From IMG/VR virus record IMGVR_UViG_3300032322_001765, positions 1 through 64,000 of that record: 64,000 nt of DNA, one strand, 5' to 3'. Each line of letters begins with the position of its first letter. The stretch's first letter is position 1. Positions 29,901-47,399 of the stretch are shown piece after piece. The notes under the pieces are model-generated. The model searched no databases, was not told the origin of the DNA, and worked only from the letters and a program-made list of their open reading frames with translations. The translations under genes and the position numbers were made by a program.

Positions 29901-32900
29901 TTAAATTATTTTGAAACGTTGGGCTTGTAAAATCATACACTTGATCCCAAGTTATGCCGGTACTGCTTCTTAAAATTTTACCACCAACTGCATAAAATAC
30001 CCCATTCACATTTATGACAGAGCTTAATGAAACATTACCCACTCCTATTTGTGAAGTATCGAATGTTCCTTGATCGTATCCAAGAATGTCAAATCCTGTA
30101 ACACTACCTGTAGACACCCAATCTGATTTATCAAAGCTTAAATATATTGGACTTGCAGTAGTTGTTGTAACTACAATATATGCACCGCCTGAATATATAA
30201 TATCTGTTATACCTAAAGTTATCGATGCTATTTCATAACTAGACCAAGCACCAGTTTGCGTAAGCGTAAGAATAAAACTTGCTTCGCTACTTTCACCTGC
30301 CGCTACGAAAGTAGTACCATCATATGTTATAGCCTTGATATCTATTCCTGTAGGATAGAAAGGCAAGCTTTGTACAACAGTATCTATAGGGAATTCATCT
30401 TCTGGTGCAAAAGAATTTCCATAATAAACATTATTAGGATAGGTAATACCTTTTACTAGTTGTTGGGCATCTTTGCCAGGCATACCAACAGTTGGCTGAT
30501 AATAAGCTTCAATTCTATCCAATGCATTTATTGCATTATCACTACTTAATAATGGATACCATTTAGAAGGATTAAATTCTTGATCATTGTTAGCCTCTAT
30601 ACATTGCCAAATAAAACCTTGGTATATTACTAGTGAACTAGTGTTATAATTATAGTTATAATTATTAACTATTGGTTCTGGTAAATATCCGTAATTATTA
30701 CCAGAACCATTCCAAATAAATGATGAGTAACTTACTGGTACGGTTAACAATGTATTTTCAAAAACTCCTATTGTTCCTGTTTGTGTAGAACTATCATAAT
30801 CTAGTGCCTTTACATAGTACTGACTGAATTCACCTATTGATAGCCCTTCAATTGTAGCATTAAAAATACTATTTGATTCAGAAACAATATCTATAGTAAT
30901 TTTAGCATCATTAACAAGAGGTGCACCACCTAATAAAGCGCCTGATATAATAATTGTATTGCCGGCATTGTATATAAACCCGGGATTAAGAATTTCCATA
31001 TAATACAAATTGTTAATATTATCTGGATTAAACTTGGGTCTACTAATTCTAATTAATGCACCGCCTCCTGTGTACATTTGTGAAGTAGTGACAGTTTGTA
31101 CAGATGATACAGTATAAGTTCCTGCGCCACCCGAACCAGTTCCGAATGCAGTTATTTCACATGACCCAATAATATTCGGATTATATACTTTATCTCCTAC
31201 AACCAAAGATTCACCATCTTCTATAACATCAACCGTAAGTGTAGTACCTGTTATACTCCCCACAAAGTTTTTACCGGTATCATCGTAAATGTAGCTACTG
31301 TGAATTTTATAAAAATACATGTAAGACCCGTTAATCTGTCCGGGCTTCAAATCACTGTAACTATAGTCTAGTGTAACTACCGCTTGACCGTCAACATCGT
31401 CTAAATCTAATATTGGTAATACTGCTCCTTGTAGACTGCTTAAACTTGCATCGTTAGAAACGCCATATACTGAAATTTCCGTAATTCCGCCATTTCCATC
31501 TATATCTTCTACCACAATTAAACAATTATTAGGAATATTTCCAGTTAAGAAAAGAAGAGGACCTGTACCTGATTCAGTGGCAGGCTCACTTATCATAATG
31601 TTGTTATTGGTTGTTTTGCTTTTAACTACAGCCCCATATGGTATACCAAATCCGGTAACATAATCACCGATACTAATACCAGTTGTATTTACCATTTCAA
31701 TAATAGAAGAACCTTCAACAGTTGTACCTTCTAATTGTTCTGTCGCATTAGCCCCGCCTAAAGAAGTACCTTGAACAGTTAACACATCTCCTGTAACATA
31801 ATCTTCACCTATAGTTACAATGTCGGCGTAGTATGTTCCACCCAGTAATACATTAAAGATGTTGAATTCAGCTCCATTACCTGAACCGCCGGTTGGTGCT
31901 CTTTCGCCTGAATCTACTGATGCAAAAAGTTTAGTAGTATTACTTGAATCGTTGCCTATGCTTAGATACGGGCTTGAATAGAAAGTATTCGGCATCCATT
32001 CAGTTATTGAACTTCTATAACTGGTCCTATCAAATTTTAATATTGGTTTGATACTTCTTACTTTTTCGCTCACCATTGTAGGAATAGCTTTTGCAGTAAG
32101 AGAAATTCTATGTGTATATGTAGGTTCTAATAAAGTTTGATTAATAAACGGTACTGGATTGTTACCAGTCAAAGCGTCATCGTATGTTCTATGTAATGTC
32201 ACAACCGCTGCATTTATAAGAGAAAATGCAACTACGGTTCTTGTTGTAAATATATCAATATTATGGATATAGTAATATCCATCCGGAACTAATTTATAAC
32301 CATTTGTTGTGATGCCGGTAGAATAAATTAAATCTCCGCTTATTAGGTTAGTAGTCAAATACTGAATAGAAAAACCAACAAAATTTATTCTTTCAATAGA
32401 AGATTCATAAGATACACTAGGCTCAAAAACGATTTCAGGAGGCACTACATAACCTTCACCGGCATCAATTATGTTTATTGATACAACTTTATCGCCACTT
32501 AGATTAGATGTAAGCAGTGCTTGACGTTTTGGCGCAGGATATTTTGTTGTATCAATAAACGCCGTAACAGTTGGAGGAGTAACATAATCTCTACTTCCAT
32601 TAAATACGCTTACTGCCGGCATATTAATATAAATTGGTGTTCCGGCAAAATGTGATTCTGCCTGAGAATCGTTAATAGCTCGACTAATGCCTAATATTAT
32701 TCCCCTCTGTCTATCAACACTTGTATAACCGATAAACTCATTGTTAATTTTTAATGTCCCTGTAACAGGCAATCCTTCGGCATTGTCTACAATTATTTGC
32801 AAATCAGTATTGCTTATAAAACTACCAACATTACATATGATTACATTATCTATTACTCCTAAACTCAATCCATAATTATTATACCATTCAGTATATTTAG

Positions 32901-35900
32901 GATCATTCCAAATATCGCTGTTTGTTGTAAACTGATCAGGATAACTTGGATAAACAGGATTTGTTGCAGAATAACTACTTCCGTAAAGCAGTTGAGGAGT
33001 AATAAATCTGCCCTCTGCGTCATCATAAATTGCTGGCAAATCATAATCAGTTATATTAGCGTTATATGGTTCATTTCTTGTATAGCGTAAATAAAAATCT
33101 TTAAACACAACATGATAAGGCTTCATCTCTGTTATATAACCTTCTAACAAAGATTGATTATCACGTTGAAATTTTTGATTAGTGGTTAATTCTCTTACAG
33201 TATAACCAACATCCGCAAAACTTGTTTTAGTTAACCAAGGTAAATAATTTTGTCCCTCTATATTTTCACTTTGAATATATTCAAATAATTTAGTTAAACT
33301 TACATTTCTATCCTTAAATAAAGGTCCTAAATAAATTTGTTCATTTAATGCACGGATTATATAGCGTGTTTCAGTTGAAGGGAATGCGTCGAACCCATTA
33401 CTATCAAAGCCTGTGCCAAACCCAGTGCCATATTTTTCATAATCCCATAAACTATCTAAAAAATGTATGGTGCCGTTTTGTAGACCTATTCTCACCCATT
33501 CAGAATTTTGATATATGTATACTTCTCTATTTCCCTGACTATTGCTTGCAACACCTACTATCATACCTTCAGTGGTAGGTAGTGTTAATAAATCCGTATA
33601 TATTGAAACTTCTAGTTCGGCTCTAGTGCTATCATCATATCCTTCGGCCCACCAATAAATGTTCGCCCAATAATTAGAAGTGTTTACAAAATCCCCTTGT
33701 ATACTTAAGAATGTAGTGTTACCAAATTCATTTACTGGATAAGCCTTTACTACAGTGTTAGCGTACTGTAGATATGTTTTTAACGCAGACAGTCTGTTTA
33801 CAAAAAAGCTTTGGCGAGGTCTTACGTTTATACCAGTTTGTAAAAGTTTAGGTACGGAATAATCAGGAACACTTGCACCTGTTTCATCCAATCCAGCAAA
33901 ACTATCTAACATTCTATCGTAAAGCCCAGTAGGGGTATTAAAACCTTTGTCAACATTTGGGAATCCTGGCAAAAAATCGTCTGGATAATTTGTTCTAATT
34001 AATTTGAAATCTAAATGACCAGTTGGACCATTTGCATTAGCACTATATCCTAAATGTAGATTAGTTGATGTGTCATTAATATATTCACTTGCATTGTAAA
34101 AAGCATAAACATTAGGTTCTAGTGATGCAAAAAATGCTACACCGGAATCTTTTGGATTAGCGATATATTGCTCTACAATTGTATCACTTAATGTTTTACC
34201 TATATTAGTTGAAATTATATTTGTATTTCTAACCCAATAATAATATTTTGCAACTAGATTATTGTTACTATCTGTGGTATACGCGGTAGAGTATTTTGCA
34301 GGATCATATGGTGTCCCATTTCCTGCATAGAAGAAAGGTAGTACATCACTTTCAATCCAAGTGTAAACTGTAACATCGCTTCCTTCAAATACTGTTCCCC
34401 AGTACTTACTATTATATTGATTATCATTTTGATGATAATTCATAAATCGTGATGAAGAAGGATTATACCATAATTTTCCAATATGACTATCAGTCCAAAC
34501 TATATTACCCACAGTATTATCAGGCGAATTGTATCCGGCAGGATCTGTAGGTGTTATGTAATCTATGTTTTCTGCGACAACACCCAATAATTTTCCTTGT
34601 AGAGGATCTATAAAATCTAATCCAGTTAAGGTTTCATTGTTTCTGTTATCATATAAAGAAACTTTTTGTATTTTTTCTACGTCAACTACAGGATTAGATT
34701 GTCTATATAAATGCCAATTAGATATCTGTGTTGAATTTTCAAAAACAAGTACTTTACCACCTAACGTTGTTGGTTGAAAGTTGGGGGAGCCTATAATTAC
34801 TACACCGTTATTAAACGACAATGCAGTTCCATATAAAGGTTGTGACCCGTAATTCTGATCTATATCATTCAATGACTGCGCATAAGCATATTTTCCAATA
34901 TTGGTTAAACTTTCATCATATGATTGAATATAATCATACATGTATGCGGCACCAGCATTACTGTTAGTATCTTCAAAAATAGTTAGATTGTTGTCAAATA
35001 CTGTATCATTATGTATGTTATTGTCATTTGAAAAATCAAAAGTAGTATTAATATATCTAATAGCGACCGGTGCACTTACAACAAAACTATTTTCTTCATT
35101 GTATCTTACTGCATAGCCAAATTGTGTTCTTGTTTGCTTGTGACTATCCTGAATTATTTGAGATTTGATATAATCAGTGAACCCCATCTCATATAAATAA
35201 TTCCCATTAAAAACACTAATGTTGAGTTTATTATTCATTGGTCCTAAATTAATATCTCTTAATCTAATAATTAAACGACCATCTTCTGTTGCATAAGCAA
35301 AAACGTTTGTTACACCTGCGCTGTTAATTGCACCAGCTAACGTAGCTGCGTTTCCAGCTGGCATATACACACGATAACCATTTATTAAAAGGTAAGTATC
35401 AGCAGTAAGATTAGCCGCAAGTAAACCAGTCATTGTGCCAAAACGCTTACCCTCATTAGTAAATCTATATACTGCACCTTCTGTTTGCACATTATTGATT
35501 ACATCAAATGGTGCACCAACTAATAATTCACTGCCAAAAGTGTTTGTATCGACCGAGAATCCAAACAACTCACCCTGTCTTAAGTCACCAGTATTATCGA
35601 ACCCGTATATTTGTTGTGTTAACACAAACTGGGCGCTGCTTATTGTAATGATATCTCCTGCAAATAAACCTATCGTACCTATAACAATAATGTTTACAAT
35701 TACAACATAATTGCTTGTTGACAGTAACTTCCCATTTACATATATTCGTGTTTGATTTGTAGGTTCGAAGGCTAATACGATAAGTAGCGGATCAGTAGGA
35801 CGTTGATCATATTGTACTTCAATATTTTCAATTAATCTGTCATACATATACACTACACCGGTATTTGTGAGTGTTATATCATAATCTGTATAAGGAGCAC

Positions 35901-38900
35901 CTACAAATAATTTACTACCGTCGTGATTTGTTGCTACGCTGAAACCAAATTTGTCTCCTATCTCTGCCATTGGGGGACTAATAGATCCAACTAAACTGAA
36001 ATTAACACTAGCAATAAAAATGTTTGAACCTGTAGTTGCTGTGTACTGAATTTGTTCTATCGTATAAAAAGTAGTTGTATTTGCAGAAACGTTATAAGTA
36101 CCAGTTATTACGGTTACTGAAGCATCATCACTAAATGTTACGGTGTAAATTGGTGATCCAGCTGCAATTGTACTATAAATCATTTCAACGGTATAGAACG
36201 TTGTTCTGTTAGTGCCTGGATCATATGCCTCATTGGCAATAGTATATAATCTAGAACTAATTGGTCCTGTGTTAGAAAATGCAACTTTATCACCGTGTGC
36301 TAACTTACTACGCTGGTCTCCTGAACATCTAAACAAATAAGTACCTTCTACTACAGTGAATAATGTTGTTGCGCCAATAGCACTATATGAAGTAACAAAA
36401 TTTACCATTTGTCCTTCGTTAATATAACTTAAGCGATTTCCTGATACAGTAAATTGTCTTTGATTTACAACGGTAGCTGTTGATAACGAAATACCTGCAC
36501 TTGAATATGTTAGAGTTTTATCTCTTTGAAATGCTAAAACTGTTTCGTCATTTTGTGCACCTAAATATAACAAGTTACTGTCACCTGAAATATCCATTGC
36601 ATCACCAACTCTACCTCCTGTGATAGATATGACTTGCTCTTGAATAATACTGTTTATTGTTCCGTTAGGTGGTATTCTATAAACAAAAATTTGGCTTATG
36701 ATATTATTTGGTTTAGAAACAATTAACAAATCATTACTGTAGACTATAGTTTTACCAAACTCCCCGCCGTTATTAATTGTATTCTTTAAGAAAAATACAC
36801 CATTAGGAGAAATATCATAGTGATATACTTTACCATCTCCTGAATCACCTATAAAATACCCAACGTTAGGTACATAAGCAACGCCTGAACCAAATGTGTT
36901 TGCGTCTAGTAATCCAGAATTTAAATTATTAAGTATATAGTTATTTGTTTTCTCATAAACTGCCCAGCTCCCGTCTACACCCCGATCTACCCAAACTTTA
37001 TTAACTGCATATTCTGCATTTAATAGTGGTAATGAATCGATATCACGGGCAGTATTTAATCTTTGGCTTTGCAGTAAATAAACTAATCCGTTTCCAAATA
37101 AGACATTAATTTGGCTATTTAAGTCTAGTGAAACTCTTATAGATTCTAATGATAATACATCTTCTACTTTATAAAAACCATTAACTACTACCTCAAAATT
37201 TAAAACAGCTATGAGTTGATTTTTCAGTAATCCATGTGGTTTTTGAAATACGAAGGTAACATTACCGTCTAAATTGTTATAGACTATGCGCAATTCTGAT
37301 TGAATTGACAACGGCGTATAAATTTGCCACGTGTTGTCTTTATCTGCTACCCAAATATAATCATTTTTGTAAATGTCTTGTAAGTCAATCGCTGCCAACC
37401 CTGCAATATTATAGGATTGTCCTCTAGTATCATCAATGTTTACATAACCTGCGCTGGCTAATTTTTCAGTATAACTATTTGATATTACCGGCAATATATC
37501 TGTTGATACCACCGATCTTCCATAATTTTTAAGATTATATAATGGAATGTTTTGTTGTATACCATTTGGCGCTACATTATCTGTGATACCTAAAATGCTT
37601 GGATTTCCTGTCAAATCATATTCATTGAGAGTTACCTCAATAAAATTCTGATTCATTAGTCCACCATATTCTCCTGTTTTTATAGCCCAGTTTTCATAAA
37701 TTTCATAATTTAATTGATTCTGTTGAATATTAACGCCCTGTAACTTAGTGACACTATCTACCGTACCCTTAGAAGTTATCATATTTTTATACAGGTTAAT
37801 TTGAGTACCGTCTGTAAAATTAGCGTCAGCGAAATACTGTCTTGGTCTAAATCCTATCAATGATGCACTTAATAAATCACCGTCATTCTCTAAATTTGGA
37901 TTAACAGTATTGTAGAACAAGGTGGCTTCATATGACCGTGTACTTGAATTTGGTAATAACCCTTTTTGAATATTATCATATGATGTCTTAGACCACTCAT
38001 TATAATCAAATTCGTTCTTTGGTAAAATAGTAACTTTATTCGCAATATAATAATCATTCTTGAATATGACTATCATACCTTTTACATACTTTACATTAGA
38101 TTGCCATTCTTGAATATTATCTTGATTTAAAATAAAACCGGCGGCATTTACCGTACCATTCCATTCCGCAGATTTTGTACCGGATACAAAAATTCTTTGT
38201 TGTCTTAGTCCTGTAATTAAGTTATAAATTACATCATTAAACACTGTGACGTTATCAAAAACGACAACATGTTCGATAGTACTAAGATTAGCAGTCATAA
38301 ATGCTATTGCGTCACCTTCGTTAAGTGCTTTGACACTAAACTCAGTTCCGTTTCTATAAACGAAAAGGTCTGTCAACGAAATAGGAATTAAGTTTTGATT
38401 TAAAACAAAATTGTCTTTAGTAAATGTAAGTGGTTGGACAATTGAATTTTCTTTGTTGATAACGACTGCTCTAGCATTAGGGTTAATATTAATCGTGCTT
38501 CCAAATTCCCAACCAGTGTCTACCCAATATAATAATTCATATATTATTTGGTCCCAGTTTAACTCTAACCCATTCTCAACGTTTTCAAATTTTACACCTT
38601 GTTCTTGTAAATATAATCCATATCCTCTTATAAAAGCACACAAATCATCTAATGTAGTATATTCATATCCGTAAGGTGTAGTTATTTTAATGTTAGTATA
38701 ATTTTTTGGAATTTTAACTACAGTTGTATCAATTTGAAACGTATCTAAAACACCATTATTATTTGGGGCAAAAGAAATAAAATAATTTTTATTTTGGCTG
38801 TTACCAAAAATTTTATATCCTTTAATAGTTTTTTGTACAATTATAGACCCATACGTAATTGTATCGATTGATTGATTTTCATATAATAATACACCAAAGC

Positions 38901-41900
38901 TTTCATCCGGAATTAATAAAGAATTATTTTTGCTGTTAGTAGATCCTTTTTCGACATAAAATTTAAGTAAGTCTTTATCACTAAATCCTGCTAATCTGTA
39001 TGACAATCTAACATCTAAATTTTGTACTAAATCAGTGATCGTAGTAGTTCCATCTACTCCAAATTGATATAGATAATCAACGATCCAGTTCACGTAACTG
39101 TGAGTTGCATTTCCATTACCATATACAGTTAGATTTGCTAAAGTTGTTCTAAATCTATTATTGTATAGGTACTGTTTAAATTCTTCATTATACTTGTACT
39201 TGTCTACATCAATTCCCAAACCAAACAGTTGCGCAGGTTTTAATAAAGCTGCGATACGTATTAAATCGAAGGGCCAATTTGAACTCTTTAAATATGCGTA
39301 TTCAGCAGGACCAACATCACCTGTAGCCCATAGCTTACCAAAATTACTTACATCATATGAACCTAATAAAAACTCAAAAGGATTTTTTAATTTTCCTAAA
39401 GTATCAACTGGTATAATATCTAATAAAGCAGGTCTAATTGCATTCTCATTGATATATGGATCACCGTTATTATAAACGTATCCAGCTGCAAGATCAGCCC
39501 ACAGGTAAGTATTATCGCTTGTATATGGTGCTACACCATACCGTTGTATCCACCAATCGGGTTGTTCGGAAAAACCTAACATTTCCCATGGTCTTGTATC
39601 TGGATTTGAAGTGTCATACAACCATAAATAAATCCCTCTCCAATTACCTTTTTGAATTTTTTTATTATTAAAATTAAAAGTGCTATCTTTATAATTATAC
39701 GTAAAGGGCTTTAAAGGATCATATAAATGTTCTTCATAATCAATTCTGTTTATTCCGACCCAATTCAAAAATTGATAGTTATAAATGGCTTGATATTCCT
39801 CATAGCTTATACCTATATTTCTAAACGCACCTGGCGTAACATCAAATTGAGTAATCGGGAGTTGAGAACTTATCTTTAAATTATTATAGATTCTTAATTC
39901 AAATTCCAATAATACTCTGTCACGATAATCACTTAGAACATTGTTATTGTAATTACCATAAAGTTTATTATAAGAACCGTCATGACCTACTAAGAAATAA
40001 GTAGGTGTAGAGTATGTGTTATCTAAAACTATTTTTGGAACACTGCTTGGGTATAGACCTAATTTAGTTGGCGTATTGGGAACATAACTTCCATAAGTTT
40101 GATAATATTCTTTAATCGTAATTATATCATCATTTTGTAAATCTTTAGTAATAGTTAAATTGGGTTCAGTTGGAGAAACTACATAATCAATATTTTTTAT
40201 TAATTGAAATGTTTCTACCTGATTAACGCTGTTGCGTCTTGTTAAATAAACCAAAACTCCATAGTAATTAGCACTGGTATAATCATAAACTCTACTTAAA
40301 TTGAAAATACTTGTATATAATTCAGTTTTGAATACATAATTGTTTGTGATATATGCATTTTTTGATGGCAACATATCAGACCAAAAGAATGGACTAGTAT
40401 CAACCTTTGAAATAGACAACTGATCTAATACATCATCTAAAATAAATGCTGGGGTTTGTAAAGGTGTATACTCGCCGTTGGTCAAAGTTTGTATCATTAA
40501 TCCTTTAAATTTACTGTACTCTAAAGAATTATAATTTAATGCATCAAAAAAATTATTATTAGTATTACGCAAGAATGTGGCGCAATTTACCAAAGAAGAA
40601 CTGTTTTGAATAATACGTGTACCGTATGGTACTATATTACCTAAATCCCTATAATTATTTGCTCCAAATGCAGGTCCTTGCAAATTAGGCACATTATTAC
40701 AAATACTCTTATAATGTCCTCTAACATCACCAAGGTTGATTGTAGTGATATTATCATTAAATGGATTATGGTCTAAATTCAAAGGTATTTGATAGTAACC
40801 TATTTTTGAAACTTGGTCACTATATAACATAATTGTTATTTGTTCCCCTAAAATTGGCTGCTCATTAAAAGTTACAGAGGTTGTAGTATTTGTTGTAGTA
40901 ACTGTATAGCCGGATGCCGACACTCTTTCATTATTTTTATATACAACAATTACAGGCCATTTAGTTGTTGCTTGATCTTTTACCTTAATATCGCATGTGA
41001 TTGCAGGATTCGCTGTTGTTCCGGTATATGTCGAATCAAATACTTGATATTGAAAACTATCTTCTATAGCTGTTTGCCATCCTATTAACCTGTCATATAA
41101 TACATTAGTTTTATATTGGTAAATATAACCATCAGAAACAGATTTAGTGACAACTTGTTGATTTTCAACATATGTAAAGTTTTGAGAGTTTAAAGAAACA
41201 TTAAATTGAATATCACTATAGTTACTATCCGAACTGTATTTTATAGGAAATAGTAGAACAGGATCATCCGCTCCTGTACCAATTGAGTATTCAAAAAGTG
41301 TACAGCCTGCAAAATCACTACCGTAGTAGAAGTCGTTGTCGCCGTAACTTATTCCATTTTTATCAAATAAATCAAACAACGGTGGTTGATTTACACGTGT
41401 TTTTAGTTGTGCTTCATGCCAATTATTTCCATCAAAATAGAAAGTCGTACCTGTATAATTTTCACCTAATGAAAATACTGTTTGTTCATTAATTAGTACC
41501 TCACCACCAGGTGCAATACTAAGTGTTATAACCGGTGTGCTAGTTCCTGTAACGGATTCAAGTTGTACTCTCCAAATTTTATTTCTAACCTCTAAATTTT
41601 CATCACCTGCAAATACTATAGTTGCACCATCGAATAATGCAGAGGTAGGACCGTCTGGAGCAAAACTTGTTTGTCCTGCTACCTGTGTAAAGGCATCTGT
41701 AACCGAAAAATTAATATAGTTAGTAGAAGTCCTTGCTATTGATCCTGAATTATATAATTTTAAGTTAGGGTAAAATTCAATAATAGGTCGCTTTGCTCTA
41801 TTATTGGGATTATTTAATGCTTCAACACTTATGGTACTTACTGGAGAATTAGCAATAACAGTGTTTAGTACGTCGATGTGGAACCAGCGATTTCCTCTAC

Positions 41901-44013
41901 TCCAGGAGTTTTTATCCAAACTGTTTCTAGCAATTACGATGTAATCTTGTTCCGATGGGTAAAAAAGTGTGTCACCAAAAGGATAAGTATCGTAGGGATT
42001 GGCATCATATGGTGTAGTTAATGGGGTACCAAATAGTTCAGGTGTTTGAAATTCGCTGTCTGGTATTAATTGAATACCTAAACCCACATTTTCAACATAG
42101 TATTGATCAGCTTTATATTTTTCAGGTACAATGTTTCCACTGAATATAACTTTTAATCCATTCGTAAAAGTAATTCCATTTGGGCTAGTATATTCTAACT
42201 TCCCTAAAATATCTTTTTCTACATCAATAAAATTATATTGAGGATTATCGACTAATTTAATTACACCCACACGCTGTGGATTAGTACCATCTTGATAGTA
42301 CAATGTATCGAGTGCCGCAGTTAATATAGGAACTAAGAATATTTCAGCATAAGAATTTTTTACAAAATTTCTACCTATATATGTAGCACCGTAGTTTATT
42401 GTAATTTTAGTGTTATCAGGTAATGCTCCTGCTTCTGTTAATCTTATTATAAAATCGTTATTACCTGCATTTATTAAATTTATTCTATAATAATTTTTAT
42501 TAATTTCAGTAGCTACTTGTTGTTCAAATAAACCTTGATCTATTGTTGCTGCCATTGAACCACTAGCTGTGACTAGTTGAACTTCGCTGCCGTTTGGTTC
42601 AGTGGAAATAGTAAATGCAGTATTACTAAGTATTTCTCTCACATAGTACATACCACCATAAAATGCAGCAGAGATTGTAGTTGCTGTATTAGCAGTAATG
42701 TCAACTTCTGGACCGCCCGGGGTCGCAGAAATTGTAAATTGCGTACTACTTACTACATTTTTTATATAGTATTGGGTTCTAGCCGTTATACCAGCAATAG
42801 TAGAACCAAAAGAAAGTGGCTGATTTGCAGAAAAACCCGTTGTATCAGAGGTTGTTAATCTATTGTTAGCTGCTGTTGTTGCAGAGACTATGAATGTTCT
42901 ACCATTGGTAACACCACCAAATACCGGTCCTGAAAAGTTAATACCTTCATTAACACGTAAGTTTGCTGTAGAGGCACAGATTAGCTCATTCTCTGTGGTG
43001 CTAGTATTAGTAGCCGTAATTGTAATTGTAGAGCTAGGTGTTAATGTAGGATTGTTTATATCATAATTTGTTGAGTCATAAAATTGACCAACGTAACCCA
43101 AACTGCTAGGTGTTGAACCATAGAATAGCAAAGTTTTATTATTTAAATTTGCTATACCATCAATACCTTTTAAATTAGATAATAACGCTCCGTTAATTTG
43201 ACTGAACGATTTGTCAGTAACTAAATCTATATCAAGATTACCTGGGTATAACCAATCGTTTTGTTCGTTCGCATATGGCACTTCAAACGTCATTATGCCT
43301 GATGATGTACCATTAAAATCTACACCATATATTTCACGTGTGCTTAAGTTGGGTCTTGCTGAATTTTTTCCGCTTATTCCTGGTTCAGTTTGAATCCAAA
43401 AAGGTGACTTACCATTTAGTACAAAACTATATGTGCCGCCTCTTATGAGTGTTAGTATTGGATTATCACCTTCTACAGGAATGCTGTCTGTTATAAAATT
43501 ATAACTAAAATTAAATAAAGACTCATCACCAACTTCTACATCATACGTGACGTTATTTCGTAGGGGCGCAGTAGTAACATTTAGTACATCAGGACCATTA
43601 GGAAGCCAAAAATATTGCGCATAGTTAACTAACTTATCTAAATTGCAAAAACTATCCCACGAATAGAATTGATTAGAAAAAAGATTATTGTTATTATCAA
43701 CACTGCCGTTTTGTAATTTTAACGCATCTAAAATTCCTGGATAAGTTATTAAGTCTACGGCTCTCGCTGTATCTTTTTTCTTAAAAACAACCGCAGGTTC
43801 TAGTTGATAGTCTCTACGAATTTTTGAGGTTTCAGCAAGATAGCTATCTCTAGATGAGATGCCATATCCAAATTTGCTACCTATATAACCTTCAATTCTT
43901 GTAAAATTAGGTTGTTGTACAAGTTGATCTAACGTAGCATCAAGAAATTGTTGATTAGTTTTTGTTTTGAAGACTTCAGGTAAGAAATCAATTGTTCTAA
44001 CTTTTGTTACCAT
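26929..44013 (-). CDS. Giant (5694 aa) baseplate wedge/receptor-binding protein, positional T4 gp7 equivalent
   Basis: Single 17 kb ORF directly after gp6. Contains FG-GAP-like repeats (FGFSV...LxVGAP), BNR/Asp-box-like repeats (AVG..G.I..S.NG..W), CBM5/12-like W...Y..G..V motifs and EM..YHV.F (gp7-like PYH motif). Confidence 0.7.
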   Translation of the reverse strand: MVTKVRTIDFLPEVFKTKTNQQFLDATLDQLVQQPNFTRIEGYIGSKFGYGISSRDSYLAETSKIRRDYQLEPAVVFKKKDTARAVDLITYPGILDALKLQNGSVDNNNNLFSNQFYSWDSFCNLDKLVNYAQYFWLPNGPDVLNVTTAPLRNNVTYDVEVGDESLFNFSYNFITDSIPVEGDNPILTLIRGGTYSFVLNGKSPFWIQTEPGISGKNSARPNLSTREIYGVDFNGTSSGIMTFEVPYANEQNDWLYPGNLDIDLVTDKSFSQINGALLSNLKGIDGIANLNNKTLLFYGSTPSSLGYVGQFYDSTNYDINNPTLTPSSTITITATNTSTTENELICASTANLRVNEGINFSGPVFGGVTNGRTFIVSATTAANNRLTTSDTTGFSANQPLSFGSTIAGITARTQYYIKNVVSSTQFTISATPGGPEVDITANTATTISAAFYGGMYYVREILSNTAFTISTEPNGSEVQLVTASGSMAATIDQGLFEQQVATEINKNYYRINLINAGNNDFIIRLTEAGALPDNTKITINYGATYIGRNFVKNSYAEIFLVPILTAALDTLYYQDGTNPQRVGVIKLVDNPQYNFIDVEKDILGKLEYTSPNGITFTNGLKVIFSGNIVPEKYKADQYYVENVGLGIQLIPDSEFQTPELFGTPLTTPYDANPYDTYPFGDTLFYPSEQDYIVIARNSLDKNSWSRGNRWFHIDVLNTVIANSPVSTISVEALNNPNNRAKRPIIEFYPNLKLYNSGSIARTSTNYINFSVTDAFTQVAGQTSFAPDGPTSALFDGATIVFAGDENLEVRNKIWRVQLESVTGTSTPVITLSIAPGGEVLINEQTVFSLGENYTGTTFYFDGNNWHEAQLKTRVNQPPLFDLFDKNGISYGDNDFYYGSDFAGCTLFEYSIGTGADDPVLLFPIKYSSDSNYSDIQFNVSLNSQNFTYVENQQVVTKSVSDGYIYQYKTNVLYDRLIGWQTAIEDSFQYQVFDSTYTGTTANPAITCDIKVKDQATTKWPVIVVYKNNERVSASGYTVTTTNTTTSVTFNEQPILGEQITIMLYSDQVSKIGYYQIPLNLDHNPFNDNITTINLGDVRGHYKSICNNVPNLQGPAFGANNYRDLGNIVPYGTRIIQNSSSLVNCATFLRNTNNNFFDALNYNSLEYSKFKGLMIQTLTNGEYTPLQTPAFILDDVLDQLSISKVDTSPFFWSDMLPSKNAYITNNYVFKTELYTSIFNLSRVYDYTSANYYGVLVYLTRRNSVNQVETFQLIKNIDYVVSPTEPNLTITKDLQNDDIITIKEYYQTYGSYVPNTPTKLGLYPSSVPKIVLDNTYSTPTYFLVGHDGSYNKLYGNYNNNVLSDYRDRVLLEFELRIYNNLKISSQLPITQFDVTPGAFRNIGISYEEYQAIYNYQFLNWVGINRIDYEEHLYDPLKPFTYNYKDSTFNFNNKKIQKGNWRGIYLWLYDTSNPDTRPWEMLGFSEQPDWWIQRYGVAPYTSDNTYLWADLAAGYVYNNGDPYINENAIRPALLDIIPVDTLGKLKNPFEFLLGSYDVSNFGKLWATGDVGPAEYAYLKSSNWPFDLIRIAALLKPAQLFGLGIDVDKYKYNEEFKQYLYNNRFRTTLANLTVYGNGNATHSYVNWIVDYLYQFGVDGTTTITDLVQNLDVRLSYRLAGFSDKDLLKFYVEKGSTNSKNNSLLIPDESFGVLLYENQSIDTITYGSIIVQKTIKGYKIFGNSQNKNYFISFAPNNNGVLDTFQIDTTVVKIPKNYTNIKITTPYGYEYTTLDDLCAFIRGYGLYLQEQGVKFENVENGLELNWDQIIYELLYWVDTGWEFGSTININPNARAVVINKENSIVQPLTFTKDNFVLNQNLIPISLTDLFVYRNGTEFSVKALNEGDAIAFMTANLSTIEHVVVFDNVTVFNDVIYNLITGLRQQRIFVSGTKSAEWNGTVNAAGFILNQDNIQEWQSNVKYVKGMIVIFKNDYYIANKVTILPKNEFDYNEWSKTSYDNIQKGLLPNSSTRSYEATLFYNTVNPNLENDGDLLSASLIGFRPRQYFADANFTDGTQINLYKNMITSKGTVDSVTKLQGVNIQQNQLNYEIYENWAIKTGEYGGLMNQNFIEVTLNEYDLTGNPSILGITDNVAPNGIQQNIPLYNLKNYGRSVVSTDILPVISNSYTEKLASAGYVNIDDTRGQSYNIAGLAAIDLQDIYKNDYIWVADKDNTWQIYTPLSIQSELRIVYNNLDGNVTFVFQKPHGLLKNQLIAVLNFEVVVNGFYKVEDVLSLESIRVSLDLNSQINVLFGNGLVYLLQSQRLNTARDIDSLPLLNAEYAVNKVWVDRGVDGSWAVYEKTNNYILNNLNSGLLDANTFGSGVAYVPNVGYFIGDSGDGKVYHYDISPNGVFFLKNTINNGGEFGKTIVYSNDLLIVSKPNNIISQIFVYRIPPNGTINSIIQEQVISITGGRVGDAMDISGDSNLLYLGAQNDETVLAFQRDKTLTYSSAGISLSTATVVNQRQFTVSGNRLSYINEGQMVNFVTSYSAIGATTLFTVVEGTYLFRCSGDQRSKLAHGDKVAFSNTGPISSRLYTIANEAYDPGTNRTTFYTVEMIYSTIAAGSPIYTVTFSDDASVTVITGTYNVSANTTTFYTIEQIQYTATTGSNIFIASVNFSLVGSISPPMAEIGDKFGFSVATNHDGSKLFVGAPYTDYDITLTNTGVVYMYDRLIENIEVQYDQRPTDPLLIVLAFEPTNQTRIYVNGKLLSTSNYVVIVNIIVIGTIGLFAGDIITISSAQFVLTQQIYGFDNTGDLRQGELFGFSVDTNTFGSELLVGAPFDVINNVQTEGAVYRFTNEGKRFGTMTGLLAANLTADTYLLINGYRVYMPAGNAATLAGAINSAGVTNVFAYATEDGRLIIRLRDINLGPMNNKLNISVFNGNYLYEMGFTDYIKSQIIQDSHKQTRTQFGYAVRYNEENSFVVSAPVAIRYINTTFDFSNDNNIHNDTVFDNNLTIFEDTNSNAGAAYMYDYIQSYDESLTNIGKYAYAQSLNDIDQNYGSQPLYGTALSFNNGVVIIGSPNFQPTTLGGKVLVFENSTQISNWHLYRQSNPVVDVEKIQKVSLYDNRNNETLTGLDFIDPLQGKLLGVVAENIDYITPTDPAGYNSPDNTVGNIVWTDSHIGKLWYNPSSSRFMNYHQNDNQYNSKYWGTVFEGSDVTVYTWIESDVLPFFYAGNGTPYDPAKYSTAYTTDSNNNLVAKYYYWVRNTNIISTNIGKTLSDTIVEQYIANPKDSGVAFFASLEPNVYAFYNASEYINDTSTNLHLGYSANANGPTGHLDFKLIRTNYPDDFLPGFPNVDKGFNTPTGLYDRMLDSFAGLDETGASVPDYSVPKLLQTGINVRPRQSFFVNRLSALKTYLQYANTVVKAYPVNEFGNTTFLSIQGDFVNTSNYWANIYWWAEGYDDSTRAELEVSIYTDLLTLPTTEGMIVGVASNSQGNREVYIYQNSEWVRIGLQNGTIHFLDSLWDYEKYGTGFGTGFDSNGFDAFPSTETRYIIRALNEQIYLGPLFKDRNVSLTKLFEYIQSENIEGQNYLPWLTKTSFADVGYTVRELTTNQKFQRDNQSLLEGYITEMKPYHVVFKDFYLRYTRNEPYNANITDYDLPAIYDDAEGRFITPQLLYGSSYSATNPVYPSYPDQFTTNSDIWNDPKYTEWYNNYGLSLGVIDNVIICNVGSFISNTDLQIIVDNAEGLPVTGTLKINNEFIGYTSVDRQRGIILGISRAINDSQAESHFAGTPIYINMPAVSVFNGSRDYVTPPTVTAFIDTTKYPAPKRQALLTSNLSGDKVVSINIIDAGEGYVVPPEIVFEPSVSYESSIERINFVGFSIQYLTTNLISGDLIYSTGITTNGYKLVPDGYYYIHNIDIFTTRTVVAFSLINAAVVTLHRTYDDALTGNNPVPFINQTLLEPTYTHRISLTAKAIPTMVSEKVRSIKPILKFDRTSYRSSITEWMPNTFYSSPYLSIGNDSSNTTKLFASVDSGERAPTGGSGNGAEFNIFNVLLGGTYYADIVTIGEDYVTGDVLTVQGTSLGGANATEQLEGTTVEGSSIIEMVNTTGISIGDYVTGFGIPYGAVVKSKTTNNNIMISEPATESGTGPLLFLTGNIPNNCLIVVEDIDGNGGITEISVYGVSNDASLSSLQGAVLPILDLDDVDGQAVVTLDYSYSDLKPGQINGSYMYFYKIHSSYIYDDTGKNFVGSITGTTLTVDVIEDGESLVVGDKVYNPNIIGSCEITAFGTGSGGAGTYTVSSVQTVTTSQMYTGGGALIRISRPKFNPDNINNLYYMEILNPGFIYNAGNTIIISGALLGGAPLVNDAKITIDIVSESNSIFNATIEGLSIGEFSQYYVKALDYDSSTQTGTIGVFENTLLTVPVSYSSFIWNGSGNNYGYLPEPIVNNYNYNYNTSSLVIYQGFIWQCIEANNDQEFNPSKWYPLLSSDNAINALDRIEAYYQPTVGMPGKDAQQLVKGITYPNNVYYGNSFAPEDEFPIDTVVQSLPFYPTGIDIKAITYDGTTFVAAGESSEASFILTLTQTGAWSSYEIASITLGITDIIYSGGAYIVVTTTTASPIYLSFDKSDWVSTGSVTGFDILGYDQGTFDTSQIGVGNVSLSSVINVNGVFYAVGGKILRSSTGITWDQVYDFTSPTFQNNLNDIAYVNNTTFVGFIVVGLTYQVTSGSGTSAPTVSTQSAILTSINGTVWSTITPSLTTNGFNSVTSSVSLNRIVIVGDAGVIYYSSNASNWVQASISGSPITTNIKSVVYGNSIFVAVGDKTGNGTSDPGLILTSVNGITWTQISSQYITTENLTYVYFADNFFYAVGENDTFLRSTNGSSWTDVSSISVDDPYYVVQGNDFLYGYGPEELVAGVVTDTLSMYVNTAPGAYWDIDFNSPIWYKHTGFNMQTKTGVPNYNLKLSFANLVVNPARLSVFIIGERVSDRGRRIYENQSSANLPYSYTVDWMEETITLNQSIPAGTYILIEVYEIGNGKELIRNNSKYYPLKQDEDTGQSYFDFNIEFTPVINEPLVCVSVSGGPLTKLEYNVDYLVIPDILGFTKILFITDTYDSATDYIVFSILGDSTSVFGSVQYGYSIPETEVFVTTGVTSSFQLNLELTTLSGNNVNNSIVEKNGERLFPAGVPGADYEFQNIGGTWYLHLFISVGGSGSDTIAVTTFYDTSRQYLTTNLFNGMSDGIKCTGISFVDISKTPVLLTFNSDPGFATNDLIRIDGVQGTTELNQMTFYINKVSATTYELFKDSSLGYPVIGPNLTGFVSGGYAWLDSETIIIPYPTVPGTMPNMTYDEGNRNWITIIENSAPLGSNGVRLLPTLTNYSTSALFTGSILGTTLTVANIDKGVLNIGQEIFGGNIASGTVITAYISGFGGIGTYEVNNSQTVSSVEMNTEYDNRLSLFTDTNVDDYILITSMVTGESPNPMSFNITVNKYGNGFVTRTNSTDGSWLTQDFISTDTTMYFYNVSNLVEPISTDLIVNDESGTIYTYVQCDINEVKGVQVYNKTTISTLASSQYGLTLFNGKPAVIFSSGVSVGDLVTVTITIGNVVEINGERIRFDVINTETNTLTGLTRGVQGTSTADTHSKYSIGYGINPARRITDAEYADTWNSETITSNGDPLQISVTDTAVFLQNNAPF

Positions 44014-47000: not shown

Positions 47001-47381
47001 TTCTGTGGTACTTATTGATGTTACTTTTGCGAAGCCTTGACCAGCAATATTTCTTTTAGGAGTATAGCCAACTAAGTTTGCCAACTTAATTACGCTATCT
47101 CGTCTTTCTGCCGTATCAATAAAATTTTCTCTAGTGTTGAGATCGTTTCTAAAACTTAAGGCCTGACCCATAAACGCAACAACATCCATTAATGCGCTAA
47201 ACTCACTACTTTCGATGTAGTCGTTAAATGTTTCAGGGTAGTATAAACGTAAATAATCTACAAAAGTTTTACGTATTGTCTCAAAATCATAGCTTTGAAA
47301 ATCTGCTTGACTATACGTTTTGTAGATTGATTTCCAATCGTTTACACCAAATACACTAGATTGTCTTGAACTTGTAGCCAT
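44031..47381 (-). CDS. Baseplate wedge protein, T4 gp6-like
   Basis: DFQSYDFETI...DY..SSEFSAL.D..A...TAERRDSV..LA..GYTP and RAP..Y.TQNR.V..EDY. Confidence 0.85.
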   Translation of the reverse strand: MATSSRQSSVFGVNDWKSIYKTYSQADFQSYDFETIRKTFVDYLRLYYPETFNDYIESSEFSALMDVVAFMGQALSFRNDLNTRENFIDTAERRDSVIKLANLVGYTPKRNIAGQGFAKVTSISTTEQIRDYTNLNLSGITVLWNDPANPNWQEQFNTILNATFVDTQKVGKPGNSKVLLDIKTDEYGIRIPDGFTPVLPFSTVVDGIAMSFEGTSMTSVDSDTLYELPPGDSGVFNILYRNDKLGYGSPNTGFFIYFKQGQLQTYNFTIQEQISNQAINIDIQGINNTDTWLYELNSITNEFIEWKQVESVFANSNLQRLTSEKKVFSVNSRTNDQVTYVFGDGVFSAIPIGTFSSFVRSSNGLTYTIDPSEFQNITINIPYISRTGRQETLTITMNLQLPVSNAQARETLADIKIRAPQRYYTQNRMVNGEDYNNFPFTLYNSIIKSKAINRTSVGTSRNFDLVDPSAKYSSTNDFADDGGLYEDLNDGFTIFTANTTNDIINFLTENIPNILGGERAYQYYTQAYPRYLTTDNVILWSQTNNINGESTGFFTSGGAPISVGVFTTGNVKYITQGALLGFTAPPGYYFGSDNRLVAGLPLPSDQTSIWTSVSLVVGDGSNGGDGNLDNGLGPVRLTNSIPDGAVLSVVIPSLTNVLGAALVSECVTKIRLNQNFSLIFNNALLANQERWATSTYNNTSYFVRFQSLGYGRYLVTWRSVAYYFGSVYDVRFTFDRDKIVYDPSTGKLLQDFISILKCNTLPNYNFPFPRDVTLNVTGQTIQNDGYVDDFAVEVSAADLTTVGSYKNPDFFIDVTGYVPGTRNYTNFVFFRRVIDANLLTRYEMVPSSSIVYAYGTQADIAIVKYEYPVGQVFYAVIESKFYRTVNDNTSANIVNLELLSDYLVKTGRQGLYFQYKHISGETTRVDPGTTNIIDLYLLTQSYYTQYQNWIKDTTGTVPEPARPTINELTSQFSQISEYKMLSDSVIMNSARFKPLFGAKAEPNLRATIKVIKSSATTASVSEIRSAVLSAMNTYFSIDTWTFGDTFYFSELSAYLHSELGDLISSAVLVPNNPNMTFGDLYEIRSAPYEIFVNAAQATDIVVISALTPNELQTITV

Positions 47382-47399
47382 AGTAATATCTCTTTGTAG

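What the first reader, a model, noticed from the sequence alone, without database searches (positions are those of the whole stretch)
31070..43030. Russian-doll domain insertions inside the giant protein
At ~42550-43030 a complete module (T...F..N..L.F...I.G.....YYI....S.TQFTIS..PGG) sits inside a homologous module, between GRT and YYVREILSNTAFTIS. At ~36020-36510 YSAIG...F..SG...G.KV.F...RTTFYTVE is nested within YSSAG...F..SG...G..V.F...TTTFYTIE. At ~31545-31750 a foreign module splits LGGA/NN of a unit whose intact copy (LGGAPLVND) lies nearby, and another insert occupies ~31070-31270. Repeated loop insertion, including self-into-self, suggests a recombinational mechanism for extending adhesin arms outward.
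Basis: partly seen in the sequence, partly recalled or inferred. Interest (0 to 1): 0.65.

Follow-up and report, generated by a model that had tools for sequence, protein, structure and literature searches.

The report
Nested domain insertions in phage baseplate giant
A 5,694-residue baseplate protein of an uncultured jumbo phage really does carry small beta-barrel domains inserted inside copies of themselves, and 38 relatives preserve the stages without, with one and with two nested modules, which makes it a rare natural series showing how proteins grow by domain-in-domain insertion.

Summary
The giant ORF (window 26929-44013, minus strand, 5,694 aa) sits directly after the gp5-, gp25- and gp6-like baseplate genes. 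It matches PA5oct gp355, which that record annotates as a virion protein.

In an alignment of 38 giant homologues, the only low-occupancy segments of the window protein are residues 322-495, 4089-4158, 4249-4316 and 5383-5452.

- **Nest 1:** three states exist: no module, outer module only, and outer plus inner.
- **Nest 2:** the inner module is replaced by a 6-residue loop in 11 homologues. Two relatives carry a third level.
- **Self-into-self:** inner and outer modules are full-length homologues (hhalign E 2e-21 and 1e-23). Comparisons between different module families give probability below 3%, except M3 against M4 (88%).
- **Structure:** AlphaFold2 models (pLDDT 93 and 87) show the guests as compact barrels like EF-Tu domain II and E1 FCCH.

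Gains and precise losses recurred, with 2-5 changes per site. The recombination mechanism and an adhesin role remain inference. The insert at 31066-31269 lies at a domain boundary, not inside a domain. The closest precedent is the recursive insertions in cyanobacterial RNA polymerase Si3.

The parts
26929..44013 (-). Giant ORF, 5,694 aa (P0001). It is a virion structural and baseplate-module protein and the positional orthologue of PA5oct gp355.
   Evidence: ORF list and translation. phrog_10938 'virion structural protein', E 1.8e-223. tblastn to PA5oct, 26.5% identity, E 4e-72. Same gene order in PA5oct: hub/lysozyme, wedge, wedge, gp355, which the record annotates with ESI-MS/MS.
42895..43026 (-). 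Nest 1, outer module M1, N-terminal half (residues 330-373).
   Evidence: M1 HMM positions 1-43, E 5.7e-9. It is contiguous with the C-terminal half in the outer-only homologues P0006-12 and P0018 and in L003/L005.
42649..42894 (-). Nest 1, inner module M1 (residues 374-455). It is a complete copy inserted between GRT and YYV of the outer module.
   Evidence: 82-aa clean indel. M1 HMM positions 1-81, E 1.5e-32. hhalign against the contiguous outer module: probability 99.4%, E 2.2e-21, 79 columns. The five inner modules form one clade, support 96/93.
42535..42648 (-). Nest 1, outer module M1, C-terminal half (residues 456-493).
   Evidence: M1 HMM positions 41-77, E 6e-12. Co-folding of the two halves as separate chains: weak support, ipSAE 0.34 against best control 0.00.
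36391..36507 (-). Nest 2, outer module M2, N-terminal half (residues 2503-2541; strands 1-3).
   Evidence: M2 HMM positions 1-38. AlphaFold2 strands at model residues 9-17, 27-31 and 43-45.
36136..36390 (-). Nest 2, inner module M2 (residues 2542-2626). It is a complete six-stranded barrel in the loop between strands 3 and 4 of the outer module.
   Evidence: M2 HMM positions 1-81, E 2e-33. hhalign against the contiguous outer module: probability 99.6%, E 1.2e-23. Structural matches span model residues 49-133, exactly this segment, with Z up to 10.6. Eleven homologues have 6 residues here instead.
36010..36135 (-). Nest 2, outer module M2, C-terminal half (residues 2627-2668; strands 4-6).
   Evidence: M2 HMM positions 43-81. 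Strands at model residues 140-148, 153-158 and 171-176 mirror the inner strands at 97-105, 110-115 and 128-134.
34735..35958 (-). FG-GAP-type propeller blades directly after nest 2 (residues 2686-3093), with further segments between the blades.
   Evidence: Pfam FG-GAP_2, 32.1 bits against a cut-off of 23, at residues 2683-2724. An iterated blade HMM finds four blades: 2686-2729, 2813-2855, 2963-3029 and 3060-3093.
31750..31875 (-). LGG..ND unit A (M5), N-terminal part (residues 4047-4088). It hosts the nest-3 guest.
   Evidence: M5 HMM positions 20-52 at residues 4060-4092. Its secondary-structure pattern is the same as in intact unit B.
31534..31749 (-). Nest 3 guest module M3 (residues 4089-4160), a barrel of a different family from its host.
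   Evidence: M3 HMM positions 1-69, E 4.7e-32. Absent in 23 of 38 homologues, leaving a 2-4 residue loop. Structural matches span model residues 61-132; the best is 8eci_2 with Z 9.7, rmsd 2.1 over 69 residues.
31456..31533 (-). LGG..ND unit A (M5), C-terminal part (residues 4161-4186).
   Evidence: Aligns with the ND..i.v...G.I..v.G part of unit B and of guest-free homologues. Two strands in the model.
31066..31269 (-).
   Evidence: M4 HMM, E 6e-27. Present in 0, 1 or 2 tandem copies in homologues. Structural matches span model residues 218-288, to EF-Sec and aEF1A domain 2 with Z 5.8-5.9.
30838..31065 (-). Intact LGG..ND unit B (M5, residues 4317-4392).
   Evidence: M5 HMM positions 1-76, E 4.8e-31; present in all 38 homologues.
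27658..27867 (-). Second M4 module (residues 5383-5452), inserted in a beta-sandwich host.
   Evidence: 47% identical to residues 4250-4315, E 3.6e-11. Present in 7 of 38 homologues. The host HMM M6 is split, positions 2-20 and 23-72, but is contiguous (3-72) in P0006.
27544..27993 (-). Host domain M6 (W.T.NG.R...PN type; residues 5341-5382 and 5453-5490) around the second M4 module.
44031..51063 (-). Upstream baseplate genes: gp6-like wedge (44031-47381), gp25-like wedge (47428-47919), and hub plus tail lysozyme (47947-51063).
   Evidence: phrog_10646 E 1e-255; phrog_43 E 9e-10; phrog_13211 E 2.7e-34.

Best explanation
The giant ORF encodes the large baseplate-module protein of an uncultured jumbo myophage. 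The source is a 220.9-kb record rated 61% complete. The gene occupies the slot after the gp6-like wedge gene, as PA5oct gp355 does.

A conserved scaffold carries autonomous beta-barrel modules of 65-85 residues. These barrels resemble EF-Tu domain II and E1 FCCH, and their N- and C-terminal strands are adjacent. In the window copy, four modules sit inside loops of other small domains: M1 in M1, M2 in M2, M3 in the LGG..ND unit, and M4 in a beta-sandwich. The host halves lie 70-85 residues apart in sequence and are predicted to close around the guest.

The two self-into-self cases arose by in-frame duplication of a whole module into a loop of its parent copy. After that, modules were gained, doubled in tandem, nested further and precisely deleted many times in the family.

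Shown here:
- the split-domain architecture
- the homology of inner and outer modules
- the intermediate states in homologues
- recurrent state changes

Inferred:
- The DNA events were illegitimate or microhomology-mediated recombination, filtered by selection for fold-compatible loop sites.
- The modules project from the baseplate periphery as extra binding or spacer modules, probably for glycans.
- Nesting adds surface modules without lengthening the scaffold that must fit the baseplate lattice.
For: **Gene context.**

**State table.**
- Nest 1 is absent, outer only, or outer plus inner.
- The nest-2 inner site holds 6, 85-94, 99-121, 162, 186 or 295 residues.
- The nest-3 guest is absent (0-5 residues) or 66-74 residues.
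- M4 is present in 0, 1 or 2 copies.

**Homology of inner and outer.** hhalign gives E 2.2e-21 and 1.2e-23 over the full length. Different module families compare at probability below 3%, except M3 against M4 at 88%.

**Split HMM hits.**

**Structure.**
- AlphaFold2 of residues 2494-2676 gives pLDDT 93.3 and pTM 0.78, with mirrored three-plus-three strand patterns.
- Guest boundaries from structural matches are model residues 49-133, 61-132 and 218-288, which equal the indel boundaries.
- ESM Atlas rows align 118-127 residues across model residues 5-176, so both halves and the guest are covered.
- The nest-1 halves folded as two chains scored ipSAE 0.34 against best control 0.00. The verdict was weak support. 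The mark was reached by 58 of 80 solved complexes and 2 of 110 mismatched pairs. At a score of 0.60 or under it was reached by only 7 of those 80 and by both mismatches. The runs agree in at least 95% of contacts and the partner's pLDDT is 72.

**Evolution.**
- Minimum state changes per site are 2-5 on each of four largely congruent segment trees.
- Pairs at 76-82% core identity differ by the nest-3 guest.
- The inner M1 modules have a single origin.
- P0018 and P0019 carry a third nesting level, and P0032 holds M5 guests at the nest-2 site.
- The module families occur only in this gene within its own genome.
Against: - No atomic coordinates could be inspected, so packing of the outer halves rests on confidence scores, strand patterns and alignment spans.
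- The explicit two-chain test gave only weak support.
- No junction signature of the DNA event was found; the only oddity is an 11-nt word at both edges of the late M4 module.
- The trees are unrooted, so gains and losses cannot be separated for most sites. The clearest individual events are losses.
- Not every expansion is nested. The M4 doubles and the extra M5 units are tandem.
- Binding function and outward orientation were not tested.
- Whether nest 2 lies inside the propeller or at its N-terminal edge is unresolved.
Confidence: 0.82

Rival explanations
1. The regions are ordinary tandem arrays of degenerate repeats. The apparent outer halves are truncated first and last units, and the indels reflect unequal crossing-over between units.
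For: GRTFIVSATTAANNRLTTS can be read by eye as a weak second half of a unit. At the M4 site the doubled form in relatives is truly tandem. P0037 may carry two M2 copies in series.
Against: - The 82-aa nest-1 insert aligns end to end with the 85-90-aa contiguous module (79 columns, E 2.2e-21). It is one whole unit, not the end of one unit plus the start of the next.
- HMM hits are positions 1-43, 1-81 and 41-77, and 1-38, 1-81 and 43-81. They are not successive full units.
- Outer-only homologues have exactly one contiguous unit.
- The AlphaFold2 model gives two six-stranded units, one inside the other, with pTM 0.78.
Confidence: 0.03
2. Loss-only history. An ancient, fully decorated ancestor carried all the nested modules, and the present variation is only independent precise deletions. 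On this view there is no continuing insertion process and nothing is being 'extended outward'.
For: - The best-resolved events are losses: the whole nest 1 in the P0013-15/17 subclade, whose sister P0016 keeps it, and the nest-3 guest in P0006, P0010 and P0014.
- Inner and outer modules are only 28-29% identical, so the duplications are old.
- The inner M1 modules have one origin.
Against: - Some states are confined to a few lineages: the third-level insert in P0018 and P0019, M5 guests at the nest-2 site in P0032, M4 doubling in 8 sequences, and 19 further insert blocks that the window protein lacks, most of them with 1-6 carriers.
- M4 occurs at three different sites.
- Self-homology itself requires insertion events at some time.
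Confidence: 0.15
3. The patchy distribution of module states comes from homologous recombination between co-infecting relatives, which swaps pre-existing cassettes. It does not come from repeated independent insertions and deletions.
For: Phage tail and baseplate genes are known to be mosaic (general knowledge). About a quarter of the splits differ between segment trees.
Against: - Four segment trees share 25-28 of 35 splits and give the same minimum numbers of changes, including the segments nearest each site.
- Guest modules diverge in step with their hosts. The inner M1 tree mirrors the host tree.
- Local gene conversion over a few hundred bases cannot be excluded.
Confidence: 0.15
4. A dedicated mobile or diversifying element, such as a homing-endonuclease cassette, an intein-like element or a retroelement, places the modules.
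For: An 11-nt word occurs at both edges of the late M4 module.
Against: - The other five junction pairs show no target-site duplications.
- The guests are plain structural barrels with no enzyme domain.
- The guests are in frame and folded as part of the protein.
- The modules occur in no other gene of the genome.
- No scan for a reverse transcriptase or an endonuclease in the neighbourhood was made.
Confidence: 0.03

Closest known systems
Recursive hybrid-motif (SBHM) insertions in Si3 of the cyanobacterial RNA polymerase beta' subunit (RpoC2)
   Same: A small beta-barrel-type module is inserted into a loop of its own homologue, and this is repeated. The result is the A1-B1-C-B2-A2 architecture, described as eight domains in six levels in Prochlorococcus RpoC2 (PMC13114784).
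   Different: - The fold, the protein and the biology all differ: a transcription enzyme against a virion baseplate protein.
- The depth here is 2 in the window and 3 in relatives.
- Here the module-free, one-module and two-module states coexist among homologues of 31-85% identity, and guests of different families share sites.
Insertion and decoration barrels of phage virion proteins: the P22 coat I-domain, the insertion domain of the Mystique tail tube, and lambda gpJ, Chi and JBD30 tail-tip domains
   Same: The small beta-barrel fold is the same and the modules are used as inserts in virion proteins. VIA-align scores: Z 10.6 to 9n71_B, 9.9 to 8vjh_B, 9.7 to 8rk3_U, and 6.4 to the P22 I-domain 2m5s.
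   Different: - Those are single-level insertions of a foreign module into a large host fold.
- No sequence similarity was detected.
- Here the host is itself a barrel of the same family.
'Evolved' Dit and Tal baseplate proteins of siphophages with inserted carbohydrate-binding modules; T5 pb9 Dit with a split A domain
   Same: Baseplate proteins gain extra modules as loop insertions that are present or absent among related phages (literature found). ESM Atlas clusters of the pb9 A-domain type align over 118-127 residues of the two-domain model, TM 0.47-0.50.
   Different: The guests there are CBM or OB folds in a Dit galectin or A domain of siphophages. They are not self-insertions and not recursive. 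Carbohydrate binding is shown for some of them but was not tested here.
Endosialidase (phi92, K1F): a beta-barrel domain inserted in a beta-propeller
   Same: A barrel sits next to or within a propeller of a phage host-recognition protein. Foldseek hits 4hiz and 3ju4 have probability 0.80-0.96. The inserted-barrel description comes from my own knowledge of the EndoNF structure.
   Different: The match is weak (E about 4e-3, TM 0.25). Whether nest 2 lies between propeller blades here is not established.
PA5oct gp355 and phrog_10938 giant virion structural proteins of jumbo myophages related to Rak2, 121Q, Atu_ph07 and SCTP-2
   Same: Homologous core (residues 1035-1966 against phrog_10938, E 1.8e-223; 24-29% identity to cultured phages) and the same gene order.
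   Different: The cultured-phage proteins gave no tblastn match to residues 2380-2900 or 4020-4430, which hold nests 2-4. The nested modules are therefore features of this uncultured clade.

Membership tests
Nested (recursive) domain-insertion architecture, A1-B-A2 / A1-B1-C-B2-A2 | A complete guest domain interrupts the sequence of a host domain. | tested here: met
   Split HMM hits around a full-length guest for M1, M2, M5/M3 and M6/M4. Guest-free homologues have a contiguous host.
Nested (recursive) domain-insertion architecture, A1-B-A2 / A1-B1-C-B2-A2 | The two host halves fold into one domain. | tested here: met
   This rests on prediction only.
- AlphaFold2 gives pLDDT 93.3 and pTM 0.78, with the outer strands mirroring the inner barrel.
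- ESM Atlas alignments cover model residues 5-176.
- The nest-1 halves as two chains gave weak support, 0.34 against best control 0.00.
- No coordinates were inspected and there is no experiment.
Nested (recursive) domain-insertion architecture, A1-B-A2 / A1-B1-C-B2-A2 | Recursion: a guest is itself the host of a further insertion. | tested here: inconclusive
   In the window, the outer M1 and M2 modules are themselves indels or appendages of the scaffold, but their own hosts were not resolved. In the relatives P0018 and P0019, the M2 guest is split (HMM positions 1-58 and 34-81) by a further 54-77 aa module, which gives depth 3.
Self-into-self insertion (guest homologous to host) | Significant full-length homology between the guest and the uninterrupted host. 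| tested here: met
   hhalign gives 99.4%, E 2.2e-21 and 99.6%, E 1.2e-23. Controls between different families give probability below 3%, except M3 against M4 at 88%.
phrog_10938 / PA5oct gp355-like virion structural protein | Profile match and conserved position after the gp6-like wedge gene. | tested here: met
   E 1.8e-223. Synteny in the window and in PA5oct.
phrog_10938 / PA5oct gp355-like virion structural protein | Presence in the virion. | not testable with these tools
   The only evidence is the ESI-MS/MS note on gp355 in the PA5oct record.
T4 gp7-type baseplate wedge protein | Sequence or fold similarity to gp7. | not tested
   Only the gene position (after the gp25-like and gp6-like genes) suggests it. 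Pfam gave no such hit.
EF-Tu domain II-like / E1 FCCH-like small beta-barrel (guest modules) | Six-stranded barrel that superposes on known members. | tested here: met
   Fold level only.
- E1 FCCH 4p22_B: Z 6.2 and 6.3.
- EF-Tu, EF-Sec and aEF1A domain 2: Z 5.3-5.9.
- Phage barrels: Z 9-10.6.
EF-Tu domain II-like / E1 FCCH-like small beta-barrel (guest modules) | Pfam E1_FCCH gathering score. | tested here: not met
   The only hit scores 21.6 bits against a cut-off of 29.5, and it lies elsewhere in the protein (residues 5261-5307).
FG-GAP beta-propeller (putative host of nest 2) | FG-GAP repeats above threshold that form a closed propeller around the insertion site. | tested here: inconclusive
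   One Pfam blade above the cut-off and four blades by iterated HMM, all downstream of nest 2. The upstream blades were seen by eye only, and no fold was made of this region.
   The record is a virus contig. The gene lies in a baseplate operon and its homologues are jumbo-phage virion proteins.

The most novel reading that the evidence does not exclude
The baseplate giant of this jumbo-phage clade behaves as a natural domain-insertion library. Autonomous barrels are repeatedly copied from within the gene and grafted in frame into permissive loops, including loops of their own copies, and they are excised just as precisely. This turnover at about 25 sites would be the clade's main route for changing host recognition, and it may be helped by a specific template-switching or microhomology process.
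Probability: 0.15. Interest if true: 0.8.

Novelty: new variant of a known kind. Interest (0 to 1): 0.62.

Why it matters
Domain-in-domain insertion is common, but self-into-self and multi-level nesting are rare. They are best known from one enzyme, the cyanobacterial RNA polymerase Si3 (PMC13114784). I found no description in that paper of the module-free, one-module and two-module stages coexisting among close homologues.

Here a single gene family preserves those stages at several sites, with divergences of 15-70%. The order, reversibility and permissive loop positions of domain insertion can therefore be read directly from natural sequences.

For phage biology, it suggests how a baseplate protein can add surface modules without changing the length of the scaffold that must fit a symmetric lattice. 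For protein engineering, it provides natural, validated insertion sites and compact 65-85-residue barrels that tolerate being both host and guest.

Tried and rejected
- **Whole-protein self-BLAST** returned only the identity hit. BLAST of 70-aa fragments found only weak pairs apart from the two M4 copies, so pairwise search badly understates the repeats.
- **PDB sequence searches** of the three regions found nothing meaningful; the best were protocadherin and Atg10 at E 0.02-0.3.
- **Searches of cultured phages.** Megablast of the gene and tblastn of residues 2380-2900 and 4020-4430 found no match.
- **Junction repeats.** A search for target-site duplications or direct repeats at six junction pairs found only 5-7-nt words, except one 11-nt word at the late M4 module.
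- **Clustering of guests.** Single-linkage clustering merged everything through composite guests and was discarded in favour of per-module HMMs.
- **Upstream propeller blades.** The iterated blade HMM did not detect the blades seen by eye upstream of nest 2.
- **Two-chain fold of the nest-1 halves.** It gave only weak support: ipSAE 0.34 against best control 0.00. The mark was reached by 58 of 80 solved complexes and 2 of 110 mismatched pairs, but at a score of 0.60 or under by only 7 of those 80 and by both mismatches.
- **P0030 guest.** I first read the guest at the late site in P0030 as a host-type module. The HMM assigns it to M4, so I make no claim about it.
- **Literature.** Searches found no description of nested insertions in phage giant proteins. 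They cover open-access papers only.
Full report
**What and where.** The window holds one ORF of 5,694 codons on the minus strand (26929-44013). Residue i maps to window position 44013-3(i-1).

The window is the first 64 kb of a 220.9-kb virus record rated 61% complete. The protein matches phrog_10938 'virion structural protein' at E 1.8e-223. It also matches, at 24-29% identity, large virion proteins of the jumbo myophages PA5oct, Atu_ph07, SCTP-2 and the Rak2/121Q-like coliphages.

The genes just upstream are a baseplate hub with tail lysozyme, a gp25-like wedge subunit and a gp6-like wedge subunit. PA5oct has the same order and ends in gp355, a 3,857-aa protein whose record carries an ESI-MS/MS note. 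The 'giant protein' is therefore a phage baseplate-module protein, not a bacterial adhesin.

**Homologues give the decisive test.** Six related viral contigs and 38 giant homologues of 3,602-5,831 aa at 26-85% identity were aligned with the window protein.

The list is residues 322-495, 4089-4158, 4249-4316 and 5383-5452. The last is a second copy of the fourth insert's module (47% identity, E 3.6e-11).

The state table shows the following.
- **Nest 1:** absent in 24 sequences, outer module only in P0006-12, P0018 and L003/L004, and outer plus inner in P0001-4 and P0016. P0005 is an N-truncated gene call, so its state was taken from L003.
- **Nest 2:** the outer module is present in nearly all. 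The inner position holds a 6-residue loop in 11 sequences, one module (85-94 aa) in 17, and 99-295 aa in the rest.
- **Nest 3:** the guest is present in 15 and replaced by 0-5 residues in 23.
- **Fourth insert:** 0, 1 or 2 copies.

The junctions are clean. Examples are NGT|YYV without the nest-1 inner module and LNG-TS-NDC without the nest-3 guest.

**Self-into-self is real and is not a tandem array.** The 82-aa nest-1 insert aligns end to end with the contiguous 85-90-aa module of the outer-only homologues (hhalign probability 99.4%, E 2.2e-21, 79 columns). The nest-2 inner module does the same with the contiguous outer module (99.6%, E 1.2e-23, 83 columns).

As a control, five module families compared with one another give probability below 3%. 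The exception is M3 against M4 at 88%.

Module HMMs hit the window protein in a split pattern:
- M1 at 332-375 (HMM positions 1-43), 374-455 (1-81) and 455-491 (41-77)
- M2 at 2503-2540 (1-38), 2543-2625 (1-81) and 2630-2668 (43-81)

A tandem array would give successive full units, so this rules out the tandem reading for nests 1 and 2. Nest 3 is a foreign guest (M3) inside an LGG..ND unit (M5) whose intact copy lies at 4317-4392. The second M4 copy splits a beta-sandwich host (M6) that is contiguous in guest-free homologues.

**Structure prediction.**

*Nest 2.* Residues 2494-2676, folded with a 34-sequence alignment, gave pLDDT 93.3 and pTM 0.78. The strands read 9-17, 27-31, 43-45, then 48-57, 67-71, 83-85, 97-105, 110-115, 128-134, then 140-148, 153-158, 171-176. 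This is a six-stranded unit sitting in the loop between strands 3 and 4 of another six-stranded unit with the same spacing.

An exhaustive structural comparison matched model residues 49-133, which is exactly the inner module. The best matches are barrels of phage virion proteins:
- Mystique tail tube 9n71_B, Z 10.6, rmsd 1.9 over 72 residues
- K1 lyase, Z 10.4
- Chi tail tip, Z 9.9
- JBD30 baseplate, Z 9.7
- P22 I-domain, Z 6.4

E1 FCCH (Z 6.2) and EF-Tu-type domain 2 (Z about 5.5) also matched. ESM Atlas rows of the T5 pb9 A-domain type align 118-127 residues across model residues 5-176 at TM 0.47-0.50. That span covers both outer halves and the guest.

*Nests 3 and 4.* Residues 4030-4400 gave pLDDT 87.2. 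Structural matches fall on model residues 61-132 and 218-288, which are the nest-3 guest and the M4 module.

The verdict was weak support: ipSAE 0.34 against best control 0.00. The mark was reached by 58 of 80 solved complexes and 2 of 110 mismatched pairs. At a score of 0.60 or under it was reached by only 7 of those 80 and by both mismatches. The runs agree in at least 95% of contacts and the partner's pLDDT is 72.

I could not inspect coordinates, so packing of the outer halves is inferred from these indirect measures and from the guest-free homologues.

**Evolutionary pattern.** A tree of the conserved core and three further segment trees share 25-28 of 35 splits. They give stable minimum numbers of state changes:
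- nest-1 outer: 3-4
- nest-1 inner: 2
- nest-2 inner: 2-3
- nest-3 guest: 4-5
- M4 copy number: 5
- late M4: 3-4

Large-scale recombination therefore does not explain the patchiness.

Some events are clearly precise losses. P0016 keeps the whole nest 1 while its sister subclade lacks it. P0010 and P0014 lack the nest-3 guest that their relatives at 76-82% core identity carry.

The five nest-1 inner modules form one clade (support 96/93) whose topology mirrors the hosts, so there was one duplication event. Its polarity relative to the outer-only lineages is weakly resolved.

Evidence for gains comes from several observations:
- the self-homology itself
- M4 at three sites
- tandem M4 doubling in eight sequences
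- a third-level module inside the nest-2 guest in P0018 and P0019
- M5 units as guests at the nest-2 site in P0032
- 19 further insert blocks of 44-319 aa that the window protein lacks

Within the phage's own 220.9-kb record, the module families occur only in this gene. That points to intragenic copying.

**Mechanism.** The DNA at six junction pairs shows no target-site duplications. The one oddity is an 11-nt word at both edges of the late M4 module. The events are old: inner and outer modules are only 28-29% identical.

My best account has three steps:
1. In-frame intragenic duplication or insertion by illegitimate recombination.
2. Survival only where the guest lands in a surface loop of a small domain.
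3. Tolerance of the guest because these barrels fold on their own and have adjacent termini.

Later, tandem doubling, further nesting and precise deletion followed. This account is inference.

The idea that the modules act as extra binding or spacer modules at the baseplate periphery is also inference. It rests on the gene context and on the fold's use in other virion proteins. An attractive but untested rationale is that nesting adds surface modules without lengthening a scaffold that must keep its register in the baseplate.

**Comparison with what is known.** Domain insertion is common. A 2026 survey reports it in 20% of multidomain proteins. That survey highlights a six-level recursive insertion of hybrid-motif domains in cyanobacterial RpoC2 Si3 as the extreme case (PMC13114784). 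Phage virion proteins with single inserted barrels or CBMs are also well known, for example the P22 I-domain, the 'evolved' Dit and Tal proteins, and T5 pb9.

What is new here is the combination of four features:
- self-into-self nesting of a different barrel family
- its occurrence in a phage baseplate giant
- the intermediate states preserved among homologues
- guests and hosts exchanging roles between sites

I rate it a new variant of a known kind.

**Limits.**
- The fourth insert (31066-31269) is an indel at a domain boundary and is not a proven intradomain insertion.
- The host of the nest-1 outer module is unknown.
- Whether nest 2 lies within the FG-GAP propeller is unresolved. Four blades were detected, all downstream, and the upstream blades were seen by eye only.
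- The trees are unrooted.
- No read-mapping tool was used and no code other than table 11 was needed.

Noticed in passing
It is absent in 31 of 38 homologues. An 11-nt word, CATTATTTACT, occurs at both of its edges.
   Followed up: partly
window 34735-35958 (residues 2686-3093): Four FG-GAP-type propeller blades are separated by segments of about 80 and 105 aa, and one blade is itself interrupted. The site after residue 2883 is a family hot spot: 13 homologues carry 78-319 extra residues there.
   Followed up: partly
homologues P0018 and P0019 (nest-2 site; aligned after window residue 2601): There is a third nesting level. A module of about 77 aa (..G..I.V.G..P..YNGT..V..) sits inside the M2 guest, between YDPG and TTF.
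   Followed up: partly
homologue P0032 (nest-2 site): Two LGG..ND (M5) units occur as guests at the nest-2 site. M5 is a host in the window protein, so modules exchange host and guest roles.
   Followed up: partly
L003, L004 and L005; P0005, P0007-12 and P0028 (aligned after window residue 4304): The M4 module is doubled in tandem (HMM positions 3-65 then 2-69), not nested. Both modes of growth occur in the same gene.
   Followed up: yes
P0005 against L003: P0005 is an N-terminally truncated gene call that starts at an internal Met, residue 399 of the L003 ORF. Its apparent lack of nest 1 is an artefact.
   Followed up: yes
G000 C1:118327-131901 (+), outside the window: The same phage record holds a second giant ORF of 4,525 aa and several others of 1,700-2,650 aa. 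One of them (92216-97390) gives a marginal M5 hit, E 0.0035.
   Followed up: no
window 5261-5307 in protein residues (about window 28093-28233): A sub-threshold Pfam E1_FCCH hit (21.6 bits against a cut-off of 29.5) marks a further small barrel in the C-terminal part. This part may hold more modules than the six families modelled here.
   Followed up: no
window 9721-26760, minus strand: A long run of same-strand genes lies downstream of the giant ORF. Several have no PHROG match (22925-24890 and 9721-12102) and one matches phrog_11259, of unknown function. These are probably further tail or baseplate components.
   Followed up: no
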